This document shows, in pieces, positions 16,594 through 49,710 of a DNA stretch of 64,000 bases. Location: NCBI GenBank assembly GCA_012026655.1, contig JAAILG010000796.1, forward strand, positions 1-64,000. Direction: 5' to 3'. The notes under the pieces are model-generated. The model made no database searches and had not been told where the DNA came from. It was given only the letters and a program-made list of their open reading frames with translations. Source of the stretch: Hydrolagus affinis. Its lineage: Eukaryota. The stretch's first letter is position 1. The number at the start of each line of letters is the position of its first letter. The position numbers and the translations under genes are program-made.

Positions 16594-17196
16594 GAACATA
16601 AGGACATAAGAATTAGGAGCAGGAGTAGGCCATTTGGCCCCTTGAGCCTGCCCCGCCATTGGATAAGATCATGGCTGATCTTTTGACCTAACTCTAATTA
16701 CCTGCCCTATCCCCATATCCCCTAATCCCTCTATTTAAAAAAAAATCTATCAGTCTCAGACTTGAAAATGTTCAAGGACTGAGCATCTACAGCCTTCTGG
16801 GGTAGTGAATTCCATAGATTCACTACTCTCTGAGTGAAGAAATGTTTTCTCAACTCTGTTCCAAAAAGCTGACCCTTAATTTTAAGATTATGATCCCTGG
16901 TTATAGATTCTACTACTAGGGGAAACAGTCCCTCACTGTCTACTTTATCCAGCCCTTTAAGAATCTTATATGTTTCAATAAGATCTCCCCTAATTCTTCT
17001 GTACTCTAGAGAATACAGCCCTAGTTTATTCAACCTATCCTCATAGGTCTGTCCTCTCATCCCAGGAACTAACCTAGTGAATCTACGCTGCACTCCCTCT
17101 AAGGCAAGTATGTATTTTATTAAATAAGGAGACCAAAACTGCACACAATACTCTAGGTGCGGTCTCACCAAGGCCCTATACAGTTGCAGCAAGAAA
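16594..17196 (-). mobile_element. CR1 LINE 3' end (ORF2 C-terminus plus 3' UTR), 5'-truncated and relatively young
   Basis: ORF 16731..17234 LYRALVRPHLEYCVQFWSPY..LEGVQRRFTRL..RGDLIETYKIL..FFTQRVVNLWNSLP is an uninterrupted CR1 ORF2 C-terminus; tail ttcttatgtccttatgttc on the minus strand. Confidence 0.95.
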
Positions 17197-18114
17197 GCGT
17201 GATGCCAGTCAGTGTTATGGTTAGATTTGTACACATTTTCTGTGCAGAAGAAGACTGTTCAGCCCATTAACTCTGCACCGCTTGTCTGCTCCGACAACCG
17301 CTCAATAAAATTTAGCACTCCTCCCCAAAGTTTTTAAGCCCCCTTTTTCTGAATGTCCTGGGGTCTCAGCGACACTGTCTGTCTGATGTCACTTGGCGGC
17401 GTTCGAACCCCAGGTGATGAGCTTTCCCCTGTTTAGTCCAGGATTCTGAAGCCAAAGTTCAGGTCTCCCGTAAAGCACTGGGTGAGATAATCTTCCTTGG
17501 CACAGAGTGGATTTGGCTCATATGTACAGCAATTATCAAAGCCTTTCTTTCTCCAATTGAAAAGTTGACACTAACCAGTGACTAGTGTTATGCATGACCT
17601 GAACTATTTACACTAAAGTTTTGAACATTGCGTGTGTATCCAGACAAGATGCTTGTACGACTTTGATACAGAGCTGCTCTCATTGACTAATACCAGTACA
17701 ATGTGATCACATTCACCACACTGAGCCAATGTATGAAGGTCAGTTTTTGTCACAACTCAAACCTCCACAAGCAATTTATTTGACAGTGGAAATTGTCCTG
17801 TTGTGCCATTCTGGATCCCAAGCTGTAACTGAGCAGCTTTTACCAGGGCATCATTGTAATATGGGTTATTTCTAGATTAAGGACAAAACAAGAAAGTTCA
17901 GTTGGATAATAGTGTTGTCTAGCCACCACTGGCTCAGCCTCACTTGCTTCAACATGAAGAGTGTTGTGTGATTCCCACAGTTTGTGTTGAATTGGACGCA
18001 ATTTGAAGGTATTTCAGAAATGCCTGCGCTGTCCTCTTCACGACAAAGTAGAAATGATCAATAAAACTCTGTGTCAGGCCACTACCCTGACTGAAAGGCT
18101 CAAAATAAATGTCT

Positions 18115-20547: not shown

Positions 20548-20856
20548 GAGCGTCCTGTAGCTCAGTGGTTAGAGCACTTCCCTTACAAGCGAGAGATCTG
20601 GATTTGATTCCAGGCAGTGCGAAACATTGGCAAAGTTTCCTTACTCCACACGCCTGATAATAATCCCTCAAAAAACAATAATAAATTGGTAATTTCAATC
20701 CATGATTGTTTGTGGGTCACTGCTGTATGCAATTTTCTGTCGTGTTTCACCCACAAATATACAATCAATTCATTTTACAACATATGTCTGCGCTTTGAGA
20801 TGTCTAGAAGGTCTAGAAAGTGCTATGTCAAATGCAAGTATTATTATTATTGTTAT
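20548..20856 (+). mobile_element. Full-length tRNA-derived SINE (short subfamily, L2-type tail)
   Basis: Box A tagctcagtgg, box B-like tttgattcc and an (att)n tail; similar to the copies at 31374, 40493 and 59451. Confidence 0.9.
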
Positions 20857-21444
20857 CACATCGAAGAAATCGCATCGTTATCACATTGCAATGACTGTAT
20901 ATTTGTAGGCCAGATTGAATTGATGGCTCACTTCGCCAGTTATTTCACCAGCTCAGAAAAATATGAGTAACACATTTTCCTTTTGAAGCCTCAACTTTGA
21001 TGAAGGCATATTAGAATTTGGGTCCCTAATGTAAGAAAACACTTCCTTTGATCTGAGCACAACAAGAATCAAAGCTCCCACTGTGTGAGGCAGACACTTG
21101 CTGCAGTGGGTCTCAACAAGCGAGATTCAGCTTCCTTATTCCCACCTGTTGTGTGAGGATCACATCTGACTCTTGGCCACCTGTACACAGAGTACCTGGT
21201 ACCAACCATTGCTACCTGGAGGACCACCACACGTTTATAGGCAGCACAGCTACATATCGTGTGGGGTGGTGGAGAGGTTGTATTAACCCTTTCAGTGCCA
21301 TTTACCTGCAGTCCCGTTACATTTGTCACCAAGATGAGCTACCACTTTGCCTAGATGGGCGTCTGGACCCCGTCCAGAAGTGGCCTACCGAACATTCGCG
21401 CTAGTCTAAATAAGTCTATCTTCAGTCAGTGGTGAGTTTCCATT

Positions 21445-21505
21445 TTTTCTTGATTGAATATTTCTTCATTTATGCTTTAAATCAAGAAATATTCAATCAA
21501 GAAAA
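21445..21505. repeat. Perfect 22-bp inverted repeat (hairpin)
   Basis: ttttcttgattgaatatttctt (21445-21466) pairs with aagaaatattcaatcaagaaaa (21484-21505). Confidence 0.9.
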
Positions 21506-22000
21506 TTTGTTATGTGAGCTGACCGAAAAGGTTGGCCACCACTGTTGTACTGAGCTCAAGAGAAAAAATTCTGTGAAGCGCTTTGAGCCGTTTTGACAAT
21601 GTAATAAGGTGTTGTATCAAATGTAAGGGTTTTGTTATTTTGAGAATAATAATTATCCATACATTTGATATATACTGTAGTAGTGCTTTTCACATTTTCT
21701 CAAATATACTGTAAAATTAACTGATTGCATATTTTGTGGGCGAAGCGTGACAGCCAATTGCACACAACAGTGTCCCACAAACAATCGTGGATTGAGTGAC
21801 CAAATTATTATTATTTTTTTCAAGTGAAGTCCTGTGGAACACAGTCGCATACAGTATTGATGAACCACCTGATTGATAAACAGCACGCTGTACTGTTTGC
21901 TGGATGGCGCGCTGGAAGTCGAGCCATCCAGTAAACAGTACAGCGTGCATCCGTCACTCTCATCCACAACAAGAAGGTGAAGATGTTGGAAGTGTTCCAC

Positions 22001-22323
22001 AGTGGGGAGCGATTGAAATCTGGGTCATGGTTGTTTCTCAAAGGCACCAGGTCCATAAAATGAAGGGATAACGTTTCTGAACCATTCCAAGTCAGTATTA
22101 CTGCCTGTCGATCAGCTACAGTTTGCTTTTAGTTGTTGAGAAGATTGTGGTATAATACATTCTAAATTATCCCTAAACTGCATGCAGCAGCTGCAATACC
22201 ATATTATCCATATTATCCAGGTGTTAATATTTGCTTAATGTGCAATGAAAATCAATTTTTTTTTGCTAATTTCAGCTTTGACCAGATTTTCTCTGCTCTG
22301 GTACCATGAATCAAATACCCATC
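22001..22323 (+). repeat. Donor segment of a local inverted duplication (copy at 23112-23426)
   Basis: Reverse complement of 23112-23426, with about four substitutions and an 8-nt indel (catattatc duplicated in the donor). Confidence 0.95.
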
Positions 22324-22702
22324 TTTTTCTCTTAATAAATGTACCAGCAATCGCAAATAATTGTTTTGGACATCATAGACCTTTTCTAAATGTGAGCAAA
22401 TTTTATGCTTTAAAGAACTTGATCTATTGCCATTTCTACGTTTTTAAAAAAACTGATTCAAACCTGATTTAAGTGCTTTGAGGCATCTAGAAGATGTAAA
22501 AAGCACAATATCAATTGCAAGGATTATTATTATTTACTTCACACTTGGCTTGTTAGGGAGATCTATAAAATACGTCACAGTATTCCACAGTACTTCACTT
22601 GACAATAATTGTCCTTGCATTTGACTTAACTACCTTATCACATTGTCAAAACATCTCAAAGTGCTTCACAGAATCATAGTTGTGCAGGTCTTCACCTAAG
22701 TA

Positions 22703-23738
22703 CAGTAGAAGCCCATTTATCTGGCACCTGCGGGACCTAGCCAATGCTGGTTAAAGCGCCTGCCGGATATTCGGGCGGCCCGCAGCCGAAAACCCACTAT
22801 AAAAAAATTAAAGTTCTTTTAACACACACCATACACACCAGACTAGGTAATAACAGATAATAACAGAATATTATATTGGTACTTATTGTTAAAACTACTC
22901 TCTTGCGCTTCTCACCTTCACTGGTTGAGGTTTACAATCCAGCGATTCTTTTTTAAATGGAGCCAAGCTGGTGAAAAAAATGGTAGCGCGATTTTAAAGT
23001 CGCTCGACTTTACAAGCGAGCCGAATCCCTAGACTCTACTAGCGGCAAACCAAAATACTGCACTTGCACGACAGTGTGAGTTATCGGCTTGCCGCTAGTA
23101 TGACTTTAAAGGATGGGTATTTGATTCATGGTACCAGAGCAGAGAAAATCTGGTCAAAGCTGAAATTAGCAAAACAAAATTGATTTTCATTGCACATTAA
23201 GCAAATATTAACACCTGGGATAATATGGTATTGCAGCTGCTGCATGCAGATTAGGGATAATTTAGAATGTATTATACCACAATCTTCTCAACAACTAAAA
23301 GCAAACTGTAGCTGATCGACAGGCAGTAATACTGATTTGGAATGGTTCAGAAACATTATCCCTTCATTTTATGGACCTGGTGCCTTTGAGAAACAACCAT
23401 GACCCAGATTTCAATCGCTCCCCACTTTAAAGTCATACTCTCTCTGTTTTTTTCACCCACTCCATTTTAAAAAGAATCGCTAGACTATAAACCTCAACCG
23501 CAGCATCAAGGCTTCAAGCGCAGCATCTACCAGCAAAGGTAAAAAGCGCAAGAGAGTAGTTTTAACAATAAGTACCAATACAATATTCCGTTATTATGTT
23601 ATTATTTATGCATTTACAAATGCTTCACTGCTATTGTTCCGGATAAGTTCCGGTTTATCGAATGGGGACTTTTTTTTTGGCGTGCCGGTTATACAGAAGT
23701 GCCGGTGCATCGAATCACAGATAAACGGGCATCTACTG
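22703..23738. mobile_element. pogo/Tigger-like foldback MITE carrying captured flanking DNA
   Basis: TA at 22701-22702 and 23739-23740. TIRs cagtagaagcccatttatctg / cagataaacgggcatctactg (19/21). Internal inverted arms 22867-22910/23544-23587 and 22923-22962/23460-23499. Confidence 0.9.
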
Positions 23739-23887
23739 TACTTACATCACTTGACCTACCTCCATGTGGAGGTGCTGCAGTGAATTAATTTCATGCCAGA
23801 TACAGTGGAACTCTGCATCTGGCATGAAATTTATCAGAGCCTCTGTTTAACTCCCATTTAAACTGCATACGTCTACTTAACAATAAA

Positions 23888-23920
<33 letters not shown>

Positions 23921-23924
23921 GTGT
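23888..23924. repeat. (TG)n microsatellite
   Basis: Seen directly, with one interruption. Confidence 0.95.
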
Positions 23925-45194: not shown

Positions 45195-46622
45195 GTGGGT
45201 ATGAATCCCCTGCTTTCACTGTTTGTGACTGAAGTGGTGCTTTGCTCGGGGATTCCTAGGGGATTTCCTCTCCAAACTTACATCCCCAAAGAATTTATCA
45301 TGAATTGGCTTTTCACCCCACTGTCCATGGGATGTGTTTGGCGCTAATTGACTTTTGCGTTTGCCTTCCAGAACAATATTGACTTGGTTTCTAACTGATC
45401 TCATTCTGTGAGACGTTGAGAGTAAAGTTCTTTGAGATGTTTCTTTGTAGGACGTCCTCCCGACGTGAAAGCTGTGGTTAGAATCATTGCTCCAAACTGC
45501 AGCCTGGTGTCCCTGAATTCTCAAATCCAGATATTTTCTTTTTCATGTAAAGTGAACCAAATTGTGTTAGAGTTTATCTGTCTCTTTGTCTGTAATTGGA
45601 AAATGCTTTGGGTAATAGATTCCTTTCTGTAATGCTGGGCTTTAGCTTAACTAAAAGCTATTTAGTTAAAATTTAGACTATTTAGGCCTGTCAGCTATAG
45701 CATTGTTGCTGAGCATTCAGCTTTCAGACCTCCACCAATAATAAACTGGGATCAATACTTGTACCAAGACAGTGGAATAAGAGGCTGTGGTTGCGAGTTG
45801 TAAAGGATAGTTTCAGGACAGATGACAGGAAACATTTCTTCACTGGCGGGAGTGCATTGCATTGTTGGAGGTGCCGTCTTTCTGATCAAACATTAAACCG
45901 AGTTGCTGTCTGATTGATCAGGCGGATAGTTTGATAGTTTTTCCCAGTGTTGTGACAATCCACTGTCAAAATCAGTTAATTGCTTCATGGTAGTATGGGG
46001 CCATTTGGGATCATCCGAGGTGCTCTCCCCTACACTGCTTCTACAAAGCGTTTTAAATGTGTTTCATCCACAAAATATATAGTCAATTCACTTTACAATA
46101 TATTTTGTGAAGCTCTTTGAGAGATCTTGAAGACGTGATAAGGCACTATATCAAATGCAAGATTTATTATTATTATTCTTGTTATTATCATTCTGAAAAG
46201 AAACTGAATCCTTTCTTTTGTGCAAGAGAAAGTGTTTGCTGTATTATTGAAGTTCATCGATAAGTTATAAGTATAGGATTTGGTTTCTTGGCAACAAATC
46301 TGAGAGCAGTCAGCTATTGCACAGCATAACAAATGGGACTTTGCTGTGCAGTTACAGGTGGTAGAAGAGTTGATTCTTGCTCTGTGTTTTTTTGAATTAA
46401 CATTCTCTCTGCACGTGATGGTATTTGTTGGTTGAATAGTCAGTAAAAACCAAACAACAGCATCTACTTATTTCCCCCAATCCACTTGTCACTTTATTGG
46501 CTTATTTCCAGTTGACTCGATGACTTTTGAGTATCCTGGATTGAGTTTTCACACCTTGGTTGGTGTGAGTTCACTGTGTTGGCCCAGGTTGGAGTGTGAC
46601 ACAATGATCATGTTGTATTGTA

Positions 46623-46980
46623 CAGTAAAACCTCGATAAGACCACTCACCTCCTGGATTTTGCCAGTATTTAGAAACCTACCTAGAAATGGCTGGGGAAG
46701 CTTCGCCCATACACCATGTGTGCTGGGCATTTGGCTCAGTGAGTTTTATAATCCATCAGGATGTACATGATAAGCAACTACAAGCAGCTGTCCCAAACTT
46801 CAGGAGATTTGCAGGAAATCAGAAAAAATTTAATACTGTTATATTTTGAAATCTTAATACTGTAATAATAATAATCCTTGCATTTGATAGAGCGTGTTTC
46901 ACATCTTATCGATATCTCAAACATTGCCAGTTTTAGGGAGTTGCCAGCTATCAGAATGTCAGATTATCGAAATTTTACTG
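46623..46980. mobile_element. pogo/Tigger-like MITE
   Basis: TA at 46621-46622 and 46981-46982; TIRs cagtaaaacctcgataa / ttatcgaaattttactg (15/17); contains a SINE tail fragment at 46863-46921. Confidence 0.8.
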
Positions 46981-49710
46981 TATGTTGAGTTGTTTGATGC
47001 CTGACCAGTGCTTTATTTGGATAGTGTGGTGATTGTGTTGCACTACCTCTATAAATACAGAAACTATTTACCGGCTCCCCGCATTCAACAAATCACTTCT
47101 TGTACACTATTATTTTTATTATTATTATTCTCCCACAAATATACAGTAAATGTTCCTACTTTCCTTCCCCCAACCACGACCCCTTCCCCTTGCTCTGGTC
47201 TCTACGTCTTTTCCCCCCTTCCCTCTTTTCTTCTCCCTCCCCTGACTCCTCCCTCCCTGCTCTGGTCCCTGCCTTGGGACGTTGTTGTATTCTGTGAAGC
47301 GCTTTGAGATGTCGATAAGATGTGAAAAGCGCTATAAAAATGTAAGGATTATTATTATTAGTAGTATTATATTTGCGACCGTGACTGTAACAGCCAATGT
47401 ACCAGGCTGTTAATGAGGTTATTGTGTACATCATGATGGATTATAAAACTCACTGAGCCAAATGCCCAGTCCATTATGCCTTACAGCAAAGCTTTCCTTG
47501 AATGCAGAGGCTAGTCAGCATAAAGTACAGCATATTGTGTCACAATTGAACCACCCGGGCGCACCTAATTATGTCGTCGAGACATGTCAAAGCACTTCAC
47601 AGCAAATACTGTAAAGTGATGTGTATTTTGTTGAGCAATAATGGAGCAAAGAAGAGCTATAGTGGGACAATCTAACAATGGGGTGGATGAGACGACAACG
47701 CATTTCAACTGGACCCCACTCTGGGTTGAGGAAGGACATTGGCTTTTCTTGTGAAAAAGTGGGGAGTGGTTGTTTGTGGGACATTGCTGTGTGCAAATTT
47801 CCTGCTGCTTTCATCCACAAAACACCATGCAGTGTATCCCGTGAATCACTTTGGGTTGTTTCGATGGCATAAGGTACTATATTTAAAAACAAGGATTATA
47901 TTTCATTATTATAGAATTAACACATAGCAGCAACAACCTGTGCTAATATAGTGCCCTAATCATGCCTCGGAGCGCTTCACAGGACAGTGGTCAGACACTG
48001 AGCAAAGGAAGTACATTCTTCATCCACTCCACAAGTAGGTTTCAGTGAAGAGAAAGGCAACACAATTGCTTTCAGACTGGGAAATACTATAGAAGCCAAG
48101 ACAAATGGGTTAATTTGACTCCCAATTGCTCCTGTGAGATTTAACTGGTGTGTGTGGACTTTCAGTTAGAACCAGAGCTGTCACAGAGTGTGGAGTCAGA
48201 AATTCAACATATGCCCTCATCGACTATAAGGTTTAGATCATTCAAGCCTTTGTTGCCCAGGCGGCCTTGTACAGTAGTTAATTCAGACAGACTAGTGAAA
48301 TTGTAAGCTTCTGCAAGCCTGGAATGACGTTTCCTCCTCTGGAATGCTTCATGCTATAGATTAATGGTTTAAACAGCTGATCTGCAGTCTTGCTGACTCA
48401 GCCTACAGTTTGAAGGGGGAAAACAGCTCAATGATATCTCAAAAATTGCTGCCAATATCTAGCCCTCAGTATAATGCAGCAATTATTAAATTGATCATGG
48501 TGTCCAGACCACTGGATCAGTTCCTGGGTTTTATTTAGAGGAGATTGTTTTTGTTCAGCCAGGTGTTTGGCACATGCAGAAACCCATCACTGAAGGTATC
48601 CAAAGCAAACTAAGATAAGAGTTCCACCATGTCACCTACACATGGAAATTCCCATATGTGCTGAAGGTTGGGCGAACTGCTCGGAAGGACCATTAATTCT
48701 GATCTGTGCTGTCACAGTTTGTAGCCCAGTGAATTTCCAGCAATTTTTGTTCTCCCAGCGTTTGACATACGTAAAGAAAATGAGGGATGATAACGATCCT
48801 TCCATTTGATGCAGCATCTATCATGTTGAAATGTCTCAAAAGCACTGTCTATAATAGTGACTGCATTGCAGGCAAATGGATGTTTGTGTAAGCTATTTAT
48901 AGAAACTGCAAATCACCATCTGAAGTTGTATCAGATCTGTATTTTTGAATTGAGGCAAATAGATTTTCCAGTGATTTACACCTTATTGTGACCCTGCTGT
49001 TACGAGCATTTATTATTGTTATATAAATCATTATGAAGTGTATTAGGGGTGAGGGATGAGAGTGAATCTCCGAGTAAATTTCTGAGGTTTGAAATAAAGA
49101 TTGGTTACAAATGTGATATTATCTTTGAGGCCAAAGGTTTTTTCCTTTCTTTCCCCTGCCACTATGCATTTTACTTTAGACTTTTTTCCTCCCCTTATCC
49201 CTGTTTTCCTATTGCAGTGAAGTGACACTGTTTCTCTGACCACACATGGCAACTGCCTTCCATTACCTTGTTCACATGGCTACATGTGAGACAGGATCTG
49301 AATGGGTTTAAGGATATTTAACTAAAGGAAGCCATAAAGTTGGGCTCAGTTGCCATGCTCCAGTATGTTTCTCAATGGTCAGAGAGGGGAAGGAGCTTGG
49401 AGAGGGATAGGGTGAAATGAATAGAGAGAGGGGAATGGAGTCAGAGGTTTGGGTGTGTGATGATTATGGTGAGAAAATGTTGGCAGGATTGGAGCAATAT
49501 CAACAACAACAAAAATTGGACTCATAGTGCCCGTTAACGAATGGAGGATGTCCCAGAGGATAGAATAGAGGAAGAGTAGTTTGTAGAGGTGACCACCAGA
49601 ACATTCTTGTTGTTCTTTCTTGAGCAAGTATGAGGAAATCTGGAATCACGTAGCCCAAATATATTGCCACTTTTTTTTTTTTTAAAAAAGCCATGCAAGC
49701 CATCGTCAGA

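What the first reader, a model, noticed from the sequence alone, without database searches (positions are those of the whole stretch)
22001..23738. Foldback Tigger-like MITE holds a 315-bp inverted copy of its own flanking DNA
Seen: 23112-23426, inside a TA-flanked CAGTAG-TIR element (22703-23738), is the reverse complement of 22001-22323, which lies 0.4-0.7 kb outside the element. The copies differ by about four substitutions and one 8-nt indel. The insert sits at the symmetry centre of nested inverted arms. Inference: a break at the hairpin centre was repaired by copying neighbouring host DNA (Pack-type capture with the donor still adjacent). With both TIRs present, the chimera could in principle be mobilised. 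In the intronic pre-mRNA, donor and copy would also form a ~315-bp duplex.
Basis: partly seen in the sequence, partly recalled or inferred. Interest (0 to 1): 0.8.

Follow-up and report, generated by a model that had tools for sequence, protein, structure and literature searches.

The report
Neighbouring DNA copied backwards into a MITE
A small, high-copy jumping-gene relic carries a backwards copy of about 320 bases of unique DNA lying 0.4 kb to its left, most likely a one-off DNA-copying slip of a known kind and not a new system.

Summary
22001-22327 and 23108-23426 are reverse complements: 314 matches, 5 mismatches, one 8-nt indel. The second copy lies inside a TA-flanked element, 22703-23738, with 19/21 CAGTAG inverted ends.

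Contigs of three public DNA runs show the element's arms at summed depths of 10^4-10^5, so it is a high-copy family. Donor and insert sit at single-copy depth. The segment is therefore neither a dispersed repeat nor part of the family, and the donor is embedded in longer colinear unique DNA.

Both junctions carry microhomology (4 nt and 3 nt), and 2-9 nt of the element are duplicated around the insert. The insert splits what would be an 11+11-nt perfect palindrome.

Best reading: a microhomology-mediated switch-and-return of DNA synthesis (MMBIR/FoSTeS-type templated insertion, or excision gap repair with snap-back). This is a known kind of event.

"Pack-type" mobilisation is not supported: one copy, no gene fragment. 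The predicted ~313-bp RNA duplex is computational only; no RNA read covers either copy.

No read-level proof of the two insert junctions was obtained. The same scan separately noted this palindrome split and a second case in this window; that second case is not clean.

The parts
22001..22327 (+). Donor (template) segment. It is unique DNA embedded in a longer unique stretch (about 21898-22395).
   Evidence: Searches give the match. One search gives depth 27.5 in X1 from a single contig spanning 21787-22500. X8 contigs 21793-22113 and 22110-22424 and X6 contig 22178-22466 cross its borders.
22701..22702 (.). Left TA target-site duplicate of the MITE
22703..22723 (+). Left terminal inverted repeat (starts CAGTAG)
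   Evidence: (I9): 19/21 match to the right end
22703..23111 (+). MITE left arm, including a left-only apical block at about 22982-23096
   Evidence: alignment of the left arm against the reverse complement of the right arm; summed depth 7e4-7e5 in X1 over 22728-23142, so the left-only block also belongs to the high-copy family.
23097..23111 (+). Left half of the split palindrome. Its last 9 nt recur as a direct repeat at 23424-23432.
   Evidence: I16, 15 nt, 100%; only these two sites in the window, 0.32 expected by chance.
23108..23426 (-). Inserted inverted copy of the donor. 23112-23423 can only come from the donor. 23108-23111 and 23424-23426 are microhomology shared with the element.
   Evidence: depth 14/0/12 (X1), 18/0/8 (X8) and 0.2/1.8/1.2 (X6) in the three bins that lie wholly inside the insert.
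23425..23439 (+). Right half of the split palindrome
23427..23738 (+). MITE right arm, with the right terminal inverted repeat at 23718-23738
   Evidence: depth 7e4-7e5 in X1.
23739..23740 (.). Right TA target-site duplicate

Best explanation
This is a one-off templated insertion made by two microhomology-mediated template switches. DNA synthesis ran left to right through the foldback MITE. It left its template at the short palindrome in the apical region, with the nascent end ...AAAG at 23108-23111. It re-annealed on the 4-nt complement at the donor's near end (22324-22327), on the opposite-sense template about 0.8 kb upstream. It then copied about 320 nt away from the element, down to 22001. 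Finally it returned to the element through a 3-nt match (ACT), 6-9 nt behind where it had left, and so re-copied those few bases. In the four-point notation the switch points are ordered 3-2-4-1. I favour the element's own secondary structure as the trigger: a stalled fork or repair polymerase, of MMBIR/FoSTeS type. What is shown: the two copies, their single-copy status, the direction of copying, the microhomologies and the short duplication. What is inferred: the switch-and-return itself, its trigger, and the pre-insertion palindrome. Taken as a whole, the template-switch class (this reading plus the excision-repair rival) has about 0.7 probability.
For: The copy is inverted and its donor lies 781 bp away on the same molecule. 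The segment is single-copy while the host element is a high-copy family that lacks it (table 2). The donor borders are crossed colinearly by contigs of three runs, so the donor is the source and the MITE copy is derived (table 8). Junction microhomology is 4 nt on the left. This uses C at 22324, the state in run X8 and in the insert; the window's donor now has T. It is 3 nt on the right. These values fall in the range reported for templated insertions, 80% of junctions with 2-12 bp and a mean of 3.7 bp (PMC8421209, passages). There are no untemplated letters at either junction. The insertion point is the centre of the only perfect palindrome with arms of 5 or more in the inferred insert-free element. 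Its 11-nt arms are longer than any in the whole window, where the maximum is 10. The insert-free element folds as single-stranded DNA at -162.7 kcal/mol against -69.3 +/- 4.5 for 30 shuffles, with 171 left-right pairs. With X8 as outgroup the differences split 3 to 3: donor-derived 22177, 22324 and the 8-nt duplication; insert-derived 22072, 22091 and 22260. That is what two real loci drifting apart would give.
Against: No read or contig was shown that bridges either MITE/insert junction; only the best-supported rows are printed. No insert-free copy of the family could be read, so the intact palindrome is an inference. Scans of metagenome and prokaryote genome collections for family copies found none. 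In the predicted fold the palindrome is not a hairpin tip, which weakens the 'structure caused it' step. At 313-320 nt copied from 0.8 kb away, the event is larger than the short events that the cited models were built on (within 100 bp in the yeast system; the model leaves out long-range switches). The left microhomology is only 3 nt with a mismatch if the present donor letter at 22324 is used.
Confidence: 0.45

Rival explanations
1. Excision-triggered abortive gap repair with snap-back. The MITE was excised from one chromatid. The left broken end copied the left arm back from the sister chromatid, then dissociated at the palindrome. It folded back on its own resected single-stranded tail 376 nt outside the break and primed on itself there. 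It copied about 320 nt, then rejoined the repair by microhomology.
For: The event lies inside a cut-and-paste element with intact TA duplicates and ends. The donor is on the side and strand that resection of the left end would expose, and the orientation fits self-priming. Abortive gap repair, and template switching during SDSA that captures 'stuff sequences', are the published explanation for Ac/Ds, P, Tc1 and MITE derivatives (PMC3814204, passages, citing Rubin and Levy 1997). The microhomologies are as in the best explanation.
Against: Nothing shows that this copy was ever excised. No autonomous partner was seen in the window: none of the 20 ORFs of 110 aa or more lies inside the element. 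The sequence outcome is the same as for a replication-fork switch, so the present data cannot separate the two.
Confidence: 0.25
2. Break at the palindrome centre, followed by end-joining that captured a free DNA fragment. In this reading the flanking 8-nt duplicate comes from a staggered cut, or from off-centre opening of hairpin-capped ends. This is the reader's 'break at the hairpin centre', in the manner of centre-break palindrome revision.
For: The insert is flanked by a direct repeat of up to 9 nt, whose 8-nt core is itself palindromic. It sits at the centre of the inferred palindrome. Palindrome centres as break sites are established knowledge. That is recalled; only lists 17 papers that hold the term 'center-break', and I read none of them.
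Against: This needs a free 320-bp fragment of neighbouring DNA with ends that happen to share 4 and 3 nt with the break, which a copying mechanism explains without extra assumptions. Only 2 nt of the duplicate must come from the element once microhomology is allowed for. An 11-nt arm is short for cruciform extrusion on its own.
Confidence: 0.12
3. Assembly artefact: a chimeric or foldback read, or the other haplotype of the donor, was wrongly built into the MITE.
For: No contig bridging the insert junctions was listed. The insert's letters at 22177 and 22324 and its lack of the 8-nt duplication equal donor states seen in other runs, as reads from a second haplotype also would. The midpoint of the two copies (22713.5) lies near the MITE's left end.
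Against: The sequence between the copies is not mirror-symmetric: there is no inverted match between 22328-22702 and 22703-23107. So this is not a foldback chimera. The insert is cleanly nested, with microhomology and a short duplication, inside an element whose two halves are in the correct order and orientation. Three differences are private to the insert against both the window's donor and X8's donor. X6, whose contig 22178-22466 has 0 other letters, shows some depth in all three insert-only bins.
Confidence: 0.05
4. The 320-bp segment is itself a mobile element that inserted twice, with an 8-bp target duplication in the MITE. Alternatively, the chimera is a Pack-type element that has been mobilised.
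For: An 8-9-nt direct repeat flanks the copy in the MITE. Both MITE ends are present.
Against: Depth is single-copy on donor and insert in three runs even at 80% likeness; in X1 exactly one contig covers 21898-22229. The segment has no terminal inverted repeats, and the donor copy has no target duplication. The donor's borders do not coincide with any break in the colinear contigs. There is no coding fragment.
Confidence: 0.03

Closest known systems
MMBIR/FoSTeS-type templated insertions (MMB-TI; Osia et al. 2021, PMC8421209, passages read)
   Same: The insertion is a copy of a nearby template. There is microhomology at both junctions (4 and 3 nt here; reported mean 3.7 bp). Synthesis returns to the original template. 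No untemplated letters are present.
   Different: This event is much longer (313-320 nt) and its template is farther away (0.8 kb) than the short events copied from within 100 bp in the yeast system described there. It lies inside a transposon relic.
Four-point template-switch model of inverted copies (Loytynoja and Goldman 2017, PMC5453318, passages read)
   Same: [quoted passage not shown] Here the point order is 3-2-4-1, which gives an inverted repeat plus a short duplication.
   Different: That model explicitly covers short-range events and leaves long-range switches aside. This event is an order of magnitude larger.
Abortive gap repair with template switching in Ac/Ds, P, Tc1 and MITE origin (Yang et al. 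2013, PMC3814204, passages, citing Rubin and Levy 1997)
   Same: Foreign 'stuff' sequence sits inside a TIR element with microhomology at the break points. Their Goblin MITE also carries an inverted internal duplicate explained by a template switch.
   Different: In those cases the result is an internally deleted derivative, and the Goblin duplicate comes from the element itself. Here no deletion is evident, and the filler is host DNA from just outside the element.
Pack-TYPE transposons (Gisby and Catoni 2022, PMC8903248, search listing and abstract start only; review PMC13317346, passages)
   Same: A non-autonomous TIR element with host DNA between its ends.
   Different: Pack-TYPE elements are plant elements that carry gene fragments and are found as mobilised copies. 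The capture route described in the review is aberrant excision of two neighbouring elements. Here there is one copy, no gene fragment, an adjacent donor and inverted orientation.
Centre-break revision of palindromes (recalled; the term was found in 17 papers, none read)
   Same: The change sits at the centre of a palindrome and destroys its symmetry, which should stabilise it.
   Different: The palindrome is only 22 nt, and the filler is templated with microhomology, not a small deletion or insertion.

Membership tests
Tc1/mariner-pogo (Tigger-like) MITE | TA target-site duplication | tested here: met
   TA at 22701-22702 and 23739-23740
Tc1/mariner-pogo (Tigger-like) MITE | Terminal inverted repeats, small size, no transposase ORF | tested here: met
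   The ends match 19/21. The element is about 715 bp without the insert. No ORF of 110 aa or more lies inside it.
Tc1/mariner-pogo (Tigger-like) MITE | High copy number in the genome | tested here: met
   Summed contig depth is 10^4-7x10^5 on both arms, against about 27 on unique flanks, in X1 and X8.
Tc1/mariner-pogo (Tigger-like) MITE | Ends related to those of an autonomous pogo/Tigger element | not testable with these tools
   No repeat library or genome search for this organism was available. The 'Tigger-like' label rests on the TA duplicate and the CAG-start ends only; the resemblance is recalled.
Pack-TYPE transposon | Host-derived DNA between the element's ends | tested here: met
Pack-TYPE transposon | The captured DNA is a gene fragment | tested here: not met
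   ORFs over the donor are 78 aa or shorter. For the 4 ORFs scanned, there was no Pfam match at E<=0.08 or above any curated cut-off. A short exon cannot be excluded.
Pack-TYPE transposon | The chimera has transposed or multiplied after capture | tested here: not met
   The insert is at or below single-copy depth in 3 of 3 DNA runs. The donor is still adjacent, so capture happened in place.
Microhomology-mediated templated insertion (MMBIR/FoSTeS class) | The inserted letters are a copy of a nearby template | tested here: met
   314 of 319 aligned letters match, and the template is 781 bp away.
Microhomology-mediated templated insertion (MMBIR/FoSTeS class) | Microhomology at both switch points, with no untemplated filler | tested here: met
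   4 nt (23108-23111, with the X8/insert state at 22324) and 3 nt (23424-23426)
Microhomology-mediated templated insertion (MMBIR/FoSTeS class) | Arose during replication or break repair synthesis | not testable with these tools
   This is a historical event; only its scar is visible.
Long intronic dsRNA / ADAR substrate | Both arms transcribed on one RNA, and A-to-G clusters in RNA but not in DNA | tested here: inconclusive
   Folding predicts 313 donor-insert pairs, with a longest perfect helix of 104 bp. The one RNA run laid (X14, single-cell polyA, 27% of it read) had 0-0.7 reads per bin on both arms. Gene context was not examined.

The most novel reading that the evidence does not exclude
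Foldback MITEs of this genome may be recurrent hotspots where DNA synthesis slips onto nearby flanking DNA and writes long (0.05-0.3 kb) inverted copies of it into the element. That would be an in-place capture route giving a vertebrate Pack-like chimeras and long perfect inverted repeats (potential dsRNA) in one step. Two points hint at this. In this window the only low-copy local duplicates that are not the arms of a single element both touch a TA/CAGT-ended element and both are inverted. Earlier unchecked notes of the scan also describe other templated-insertion scars in this genome.
Probability: 0.15. Interest if true: 0.6.

Novelty: new member of a known kind. Interest (0 to 1): 0.33.

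Why it matters
This is a clean natural example in which donor, copy, both junctions and the polarity of later mutations are all readable. It shows that a template switch can write about 320 bases of host DNA into a transposon relic in place, without any transposition step. It documents one way in which TIR elements acquire host sequence, and one way in which a long near-perfect inverted repeat (a potential double-stranded RNA) can arise in a single event. As a single case it does not change what is known about template switching or abortive gap repair. It would gain weight only if a genome-wide count showed that foldback MITEs are enriched for such events.

Tried and rejected
1. Family copies from outside the window. 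I searched metagenome contigs twice and prokaryote genome contigs once with a conserved stretch of the MITE arm. All three searches gave 0 matches. The family consensus, and so the intact palindrome, could not be read.

2. Joints. I hoped that contigs of insert-free family copies would appear as a joint skipping about 23112-23424. Only 15 of 853 joints were printed, all in the SINE parts, so this test gave no answer either way.

3. Whether organisms A and C carry the insert. The insert-only bins have depth 14/0/12 (X1) and 18/0/8 (X8), and a second contig of depth 13.8 covers 22177 in X1. These could be the insert copy, or short allelic branches of the donor. I could not decide.

4. RNA. X14 gave no reads on either copy. 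Its A>G excess (77 against T>C 50) has the same ratio as in the DNA runs (39/26, 33/22, 34/26) and lies on repeat-family reads. It is therefore no evidence of editing.

5. The second MITE (46623-46982) as an independent replicate. Its 51-nt inverted match to 47419-47469 is real (48/51). However, the inverted homology continues outside its left end: an exact 11-mer at 46595-46605 pairs with one at 47534-47544, and these are the only two exact copies in the window. The adjacent piece is a SINE tail that matches other SINE copies equally well. I therefore rejected it as a clean second capture.

6. Foldback-chimera artefact. I considered this because the two copies are roughly mirror-placed around the MITE's left end. 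I rejected it because the sequence in between is not mirrored.

7. Gene-fragment capture. No support.

8. Supplementary files of papers were not opened. Those of PMC8421209 and PMC5453318 may list longer events that bear on how unusual 320 nt is.

Full report
THE OBSERVATION

The window holds a near-perfect inverted duplicate. The repeat finder reports arms 22001-22209/23218-23426 (209 nt, 99%) and 22217-22327/23108-23218 (111 nt, 98%). blastn joins them into one 327-nt inverted match (96.0% counting the gap, E 2e-154) and finds no third copy in the 64 kb.

A base-by-base count gives 314 matches and 5 mismatches (donor 22072 C/T, 22091 G/A, 22177 A/T, 22260 T/G, 22324 T/C). It also gives one 8-nt indel, which is a tandem duplication in the donor at 22209-22216.

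The second copy lies inside an element that starts CAGTAG at 22703 and ends CTACTG at 23738. Its ends match 19/21. It is flanked by TA on both sides, in a target that reads as a 10-nt palindrome.

IS THE SEGMENT A REPEAT, OR PART OF THE ELEMENT?

I laid contigs of three public DNA runs on 21400-23880 at 80% likeness. They were X1, X6 and X8, coded as three different organisms, picked from the 15 runs that one search listed. I also laid raw reads of one RNA run, X14.

Summed contig depth was as follows.
- SINE-derived parts (21566-21897, 22396-22727): 10^4 to 5x10^6.
- Both arms of the element (22728-23142 and 23392-23723): 7x10^4 to 7x10^5 in X1. This includes the block that only the left arm has.
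- Donor region 21898-22229: exactly 27.5 in X1, from one contig. That equals the neighbouring unique contigs (25.8-29.3).
- The three bins wholly inside the insert: 14/0/12 (X1), 18/0/8 (X8), 0.2/1.8/1.2 (X6).

So the host element is a high-copy family that does not contain the segment, and the segment is not a dispersed repeat.

DIRECTION OF COPYING

The donor is part of a longer unique stretch. X1 contig 21787-22500 crosses both donor borders colinearly. So do X8 contigs 21793-22113 and 22110-22424, and X6 contig 22178-22466, the last with 0 other letters (table 8). The borders of the duplicate are thus not borders of anything at the donor site, whereas at the other site they abut family sequence. 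The donor is the source. Because it is still 376 bp from the element, the copy was made in place, after the element had inserted here.

THE JUNCTIONS

The insert is flanked by 15-nt arms, 23097-23111 and 23425-23439. They are perfectly complementary and occur nowhere else in the window. Their inner 9 nt form a direct repeat.

On the left, homology to the donor's reverse complement runs to 23108 if position 22324 was C. That is the letter in the insert and in X8's donor; the window's donor now has T and X1 has A. The last four letters before the unambiguous insert (AAAG) therefore fit both the element and the donor.

On the right, three letters (ACT, 23424-23426) fit both. No letters are untemplated.

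Allowing for this microhomology, between 2 and 9 nt of the element are duplicated. An 8-bp target-site duplication is therefore not required.

Removing the insert and one repeat copy inside a script gives an 11+11-nt perfect palindrome centred at the insertion point. It is the only perfect palindrome with arms of 5 or more in the 715-nt element, and it is longer than any in the whole window, where the maximum is 10. That palindrome is inferred. I could not read an insert-free family copy, because three scans of public collections for the arm found nothing.

STRUCTURE

The left arm and the reverse complement of the right arm align along their length, with two large indels. One of them is about 116 nt of left-only sequence just before the palindrome.

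As single-stranded DNA, the insert-free element folds at -162.7 kcal/mol against -69.3 +/- 4.5 for 30 shuffles, with 171 left-right pairs. The insertion point falls at the 3' base of an apical branch and not at a hairpin tip. 'Symmetry centre' is thus true for the small palindrome and only roughly true for the long arms.

AGE AND REALITY

All differences of the X8 contigs from the window are listed: 3 for 21793-22113 and 6 for 22110-22424. X8 can therefore serve as an outgroup.
- Donor-derived: A at 22177, T at 22324 and the 8-nt duplication.
- Insert-derived: the letters at the equivalents of 22072, 22091 and 22260.

Three changes on each copy is what two real loci drifting apart would give. 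It argues against a misassembly from identical reads.

Both window copies share T at 22106, where X1 and X8 have C. Divergence between the copies is 5/319. That is similar to the divergence between the window and X8 at this locus (9 letters over about 640), so the event is not recent.

I obtained no printed contig bridging either junction of the insert, so direct read-level proof is still missing.

MECHANISM

Five features fit one switch-and-return of DNA synthesis:
- an inverted copy;
- a template within 1 kb on the same molecule;
- microhomology at both ends;
- no filler;
- a return a few bases behind the departure point.

This is the class described as MMBIR/FoSTeS templated insertion. In that work 80% of junctions had 2-12 bp of microhomology, with a mean of 3.7 bp (PMC8421209, passages). 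[quoted passage not shown] Here the order of points is 3-2-4-1.

Two triggers are possible.
- A fork or repair polymerase stalled by the element's secondary structure. I favour this one because of the position at the palindrome.
- Excision of the element followed by gap repair from the sister chromatid. In that case the extended left end would snap back on its own resected tail. Abortive gap repair with template switching is the published account of filler sequences in Ac/Ds, P and Tc1 derivatives, and of an inverted internal duplicate in a mosquito MITE (PMC3814204, passages).

The sequence outcome is the same for both, so I cannot separate them.

End-joining capture of a free fragment at a centre break is less economical. 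It needs a fragment whose ends happen to match the break.

WHAT IS NOT SUPPORTED

'Pack-type capture' is not supported. The chimera exists once. The captured DNA has no ORF above 78 aa, and the four ORFs scanned gave no Pfam match at E<=0.08 or above any cut-off. The capture route described for Pack-TYPE elements in plants is different (PMC13317346, passages).

The RNA duplex is a sound prediction if one RNA spans both copies. Folding gives 313 donor-insert pairs, a longest perfect helix of 104 bp, and no pairing left between the element's own arms. However, the only RNA run available gave no reads on either copy. I did not test whether the locus is intronic.

RECURRENCE

In a self-comparison of the whole window, only three low-copy pairs of 40 nt or more at 88% identity or more exist. 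They are this duplicate, the element's own arms, and a 51-nt inverted match between the inside of a second TA/CAGT-ended element (46623-46982) and DNA 0.44 kb to its right. This second element is the only other clear one found by a scan for such ends. Of that scan's 5 hits, one lies within the duplicate itself and two are SINE pairs.

That looked like a second case, but the inverted homology there extends beyond the element's left end, so it is not a clean capture.

Earlier unchecked notes of this scan mention other templated-insertion scars in this genome. I did not test them.

VERDICT

This is a real and well-preserved templated inverted insertion of neighbouring unique DNA into a high-copy foldback MITE. 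It is a new member of a known kind of mutation, not a new system. Interest is modest.

Noticed in passing
window 46592-47552: A second TA-flanked element with CAGTAAAA ends (46623-46982) contains a 51-nt inverted copy (46723-46773, 48/51) of 47419-47469, and next to it an inverted SINE tail (46855-46921 against 47303-47369). The inverted homology also continues outside the element's left end: an exact 11-mer at 46595-46605 pairs with 47534-47544. The whole region looks like an older, roughly 250-330-bp inverted duplication that overlaps the element, not a simple capture.
   Followed up: partly
window 21566-21897 and 22396-22700: The donor is bracketed by SINE-derived pieces in opposite orientations (43-nt arms 21568-21610/22632-22674 at 91%, and others). 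The same repeat occurs many times in the window, with tRNA-like heads found by Rfam at 20551, 31380, 40495 and 59452. Its depth in public runs reaches 10^6.
   Followed up: partly
window 22110-22113: In run X8 (organism C) the donor locus is split at this point. One contig ends at 22113 with 22 further unlike letters. Another starts at 22110 after 328 letters unlike the window and has a higher mean depth (69 against 27). This suggests an insertion, perhaps a repeat, in that organism.
   Followed up: no
window 22324: Three different letters occur at one site in three sources: T in the window's donor, A in X1, and C in X8 and in the insert copy. This is the position that decides the length of the left microhomology.
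   Followed up: partly
window 16731-17234 (-): A 167-aa ORF that looks like the C-terminal part of a LINE reverse transcriptase. The resemblance is recalled and was not searched.
   Followed up: no
window 21883-21948, 21445-21505, 23784-23834: Three short near-perfect hairpin-forming inverted repeats (29-nt arms at 93%, 28-nt arms at 96%, 22-nt arms at 91%; loops 5-8 nt) lie close to the donor and just right of the MITE. A (TG)18 run lies at 23888-23924.
   Followed up: no
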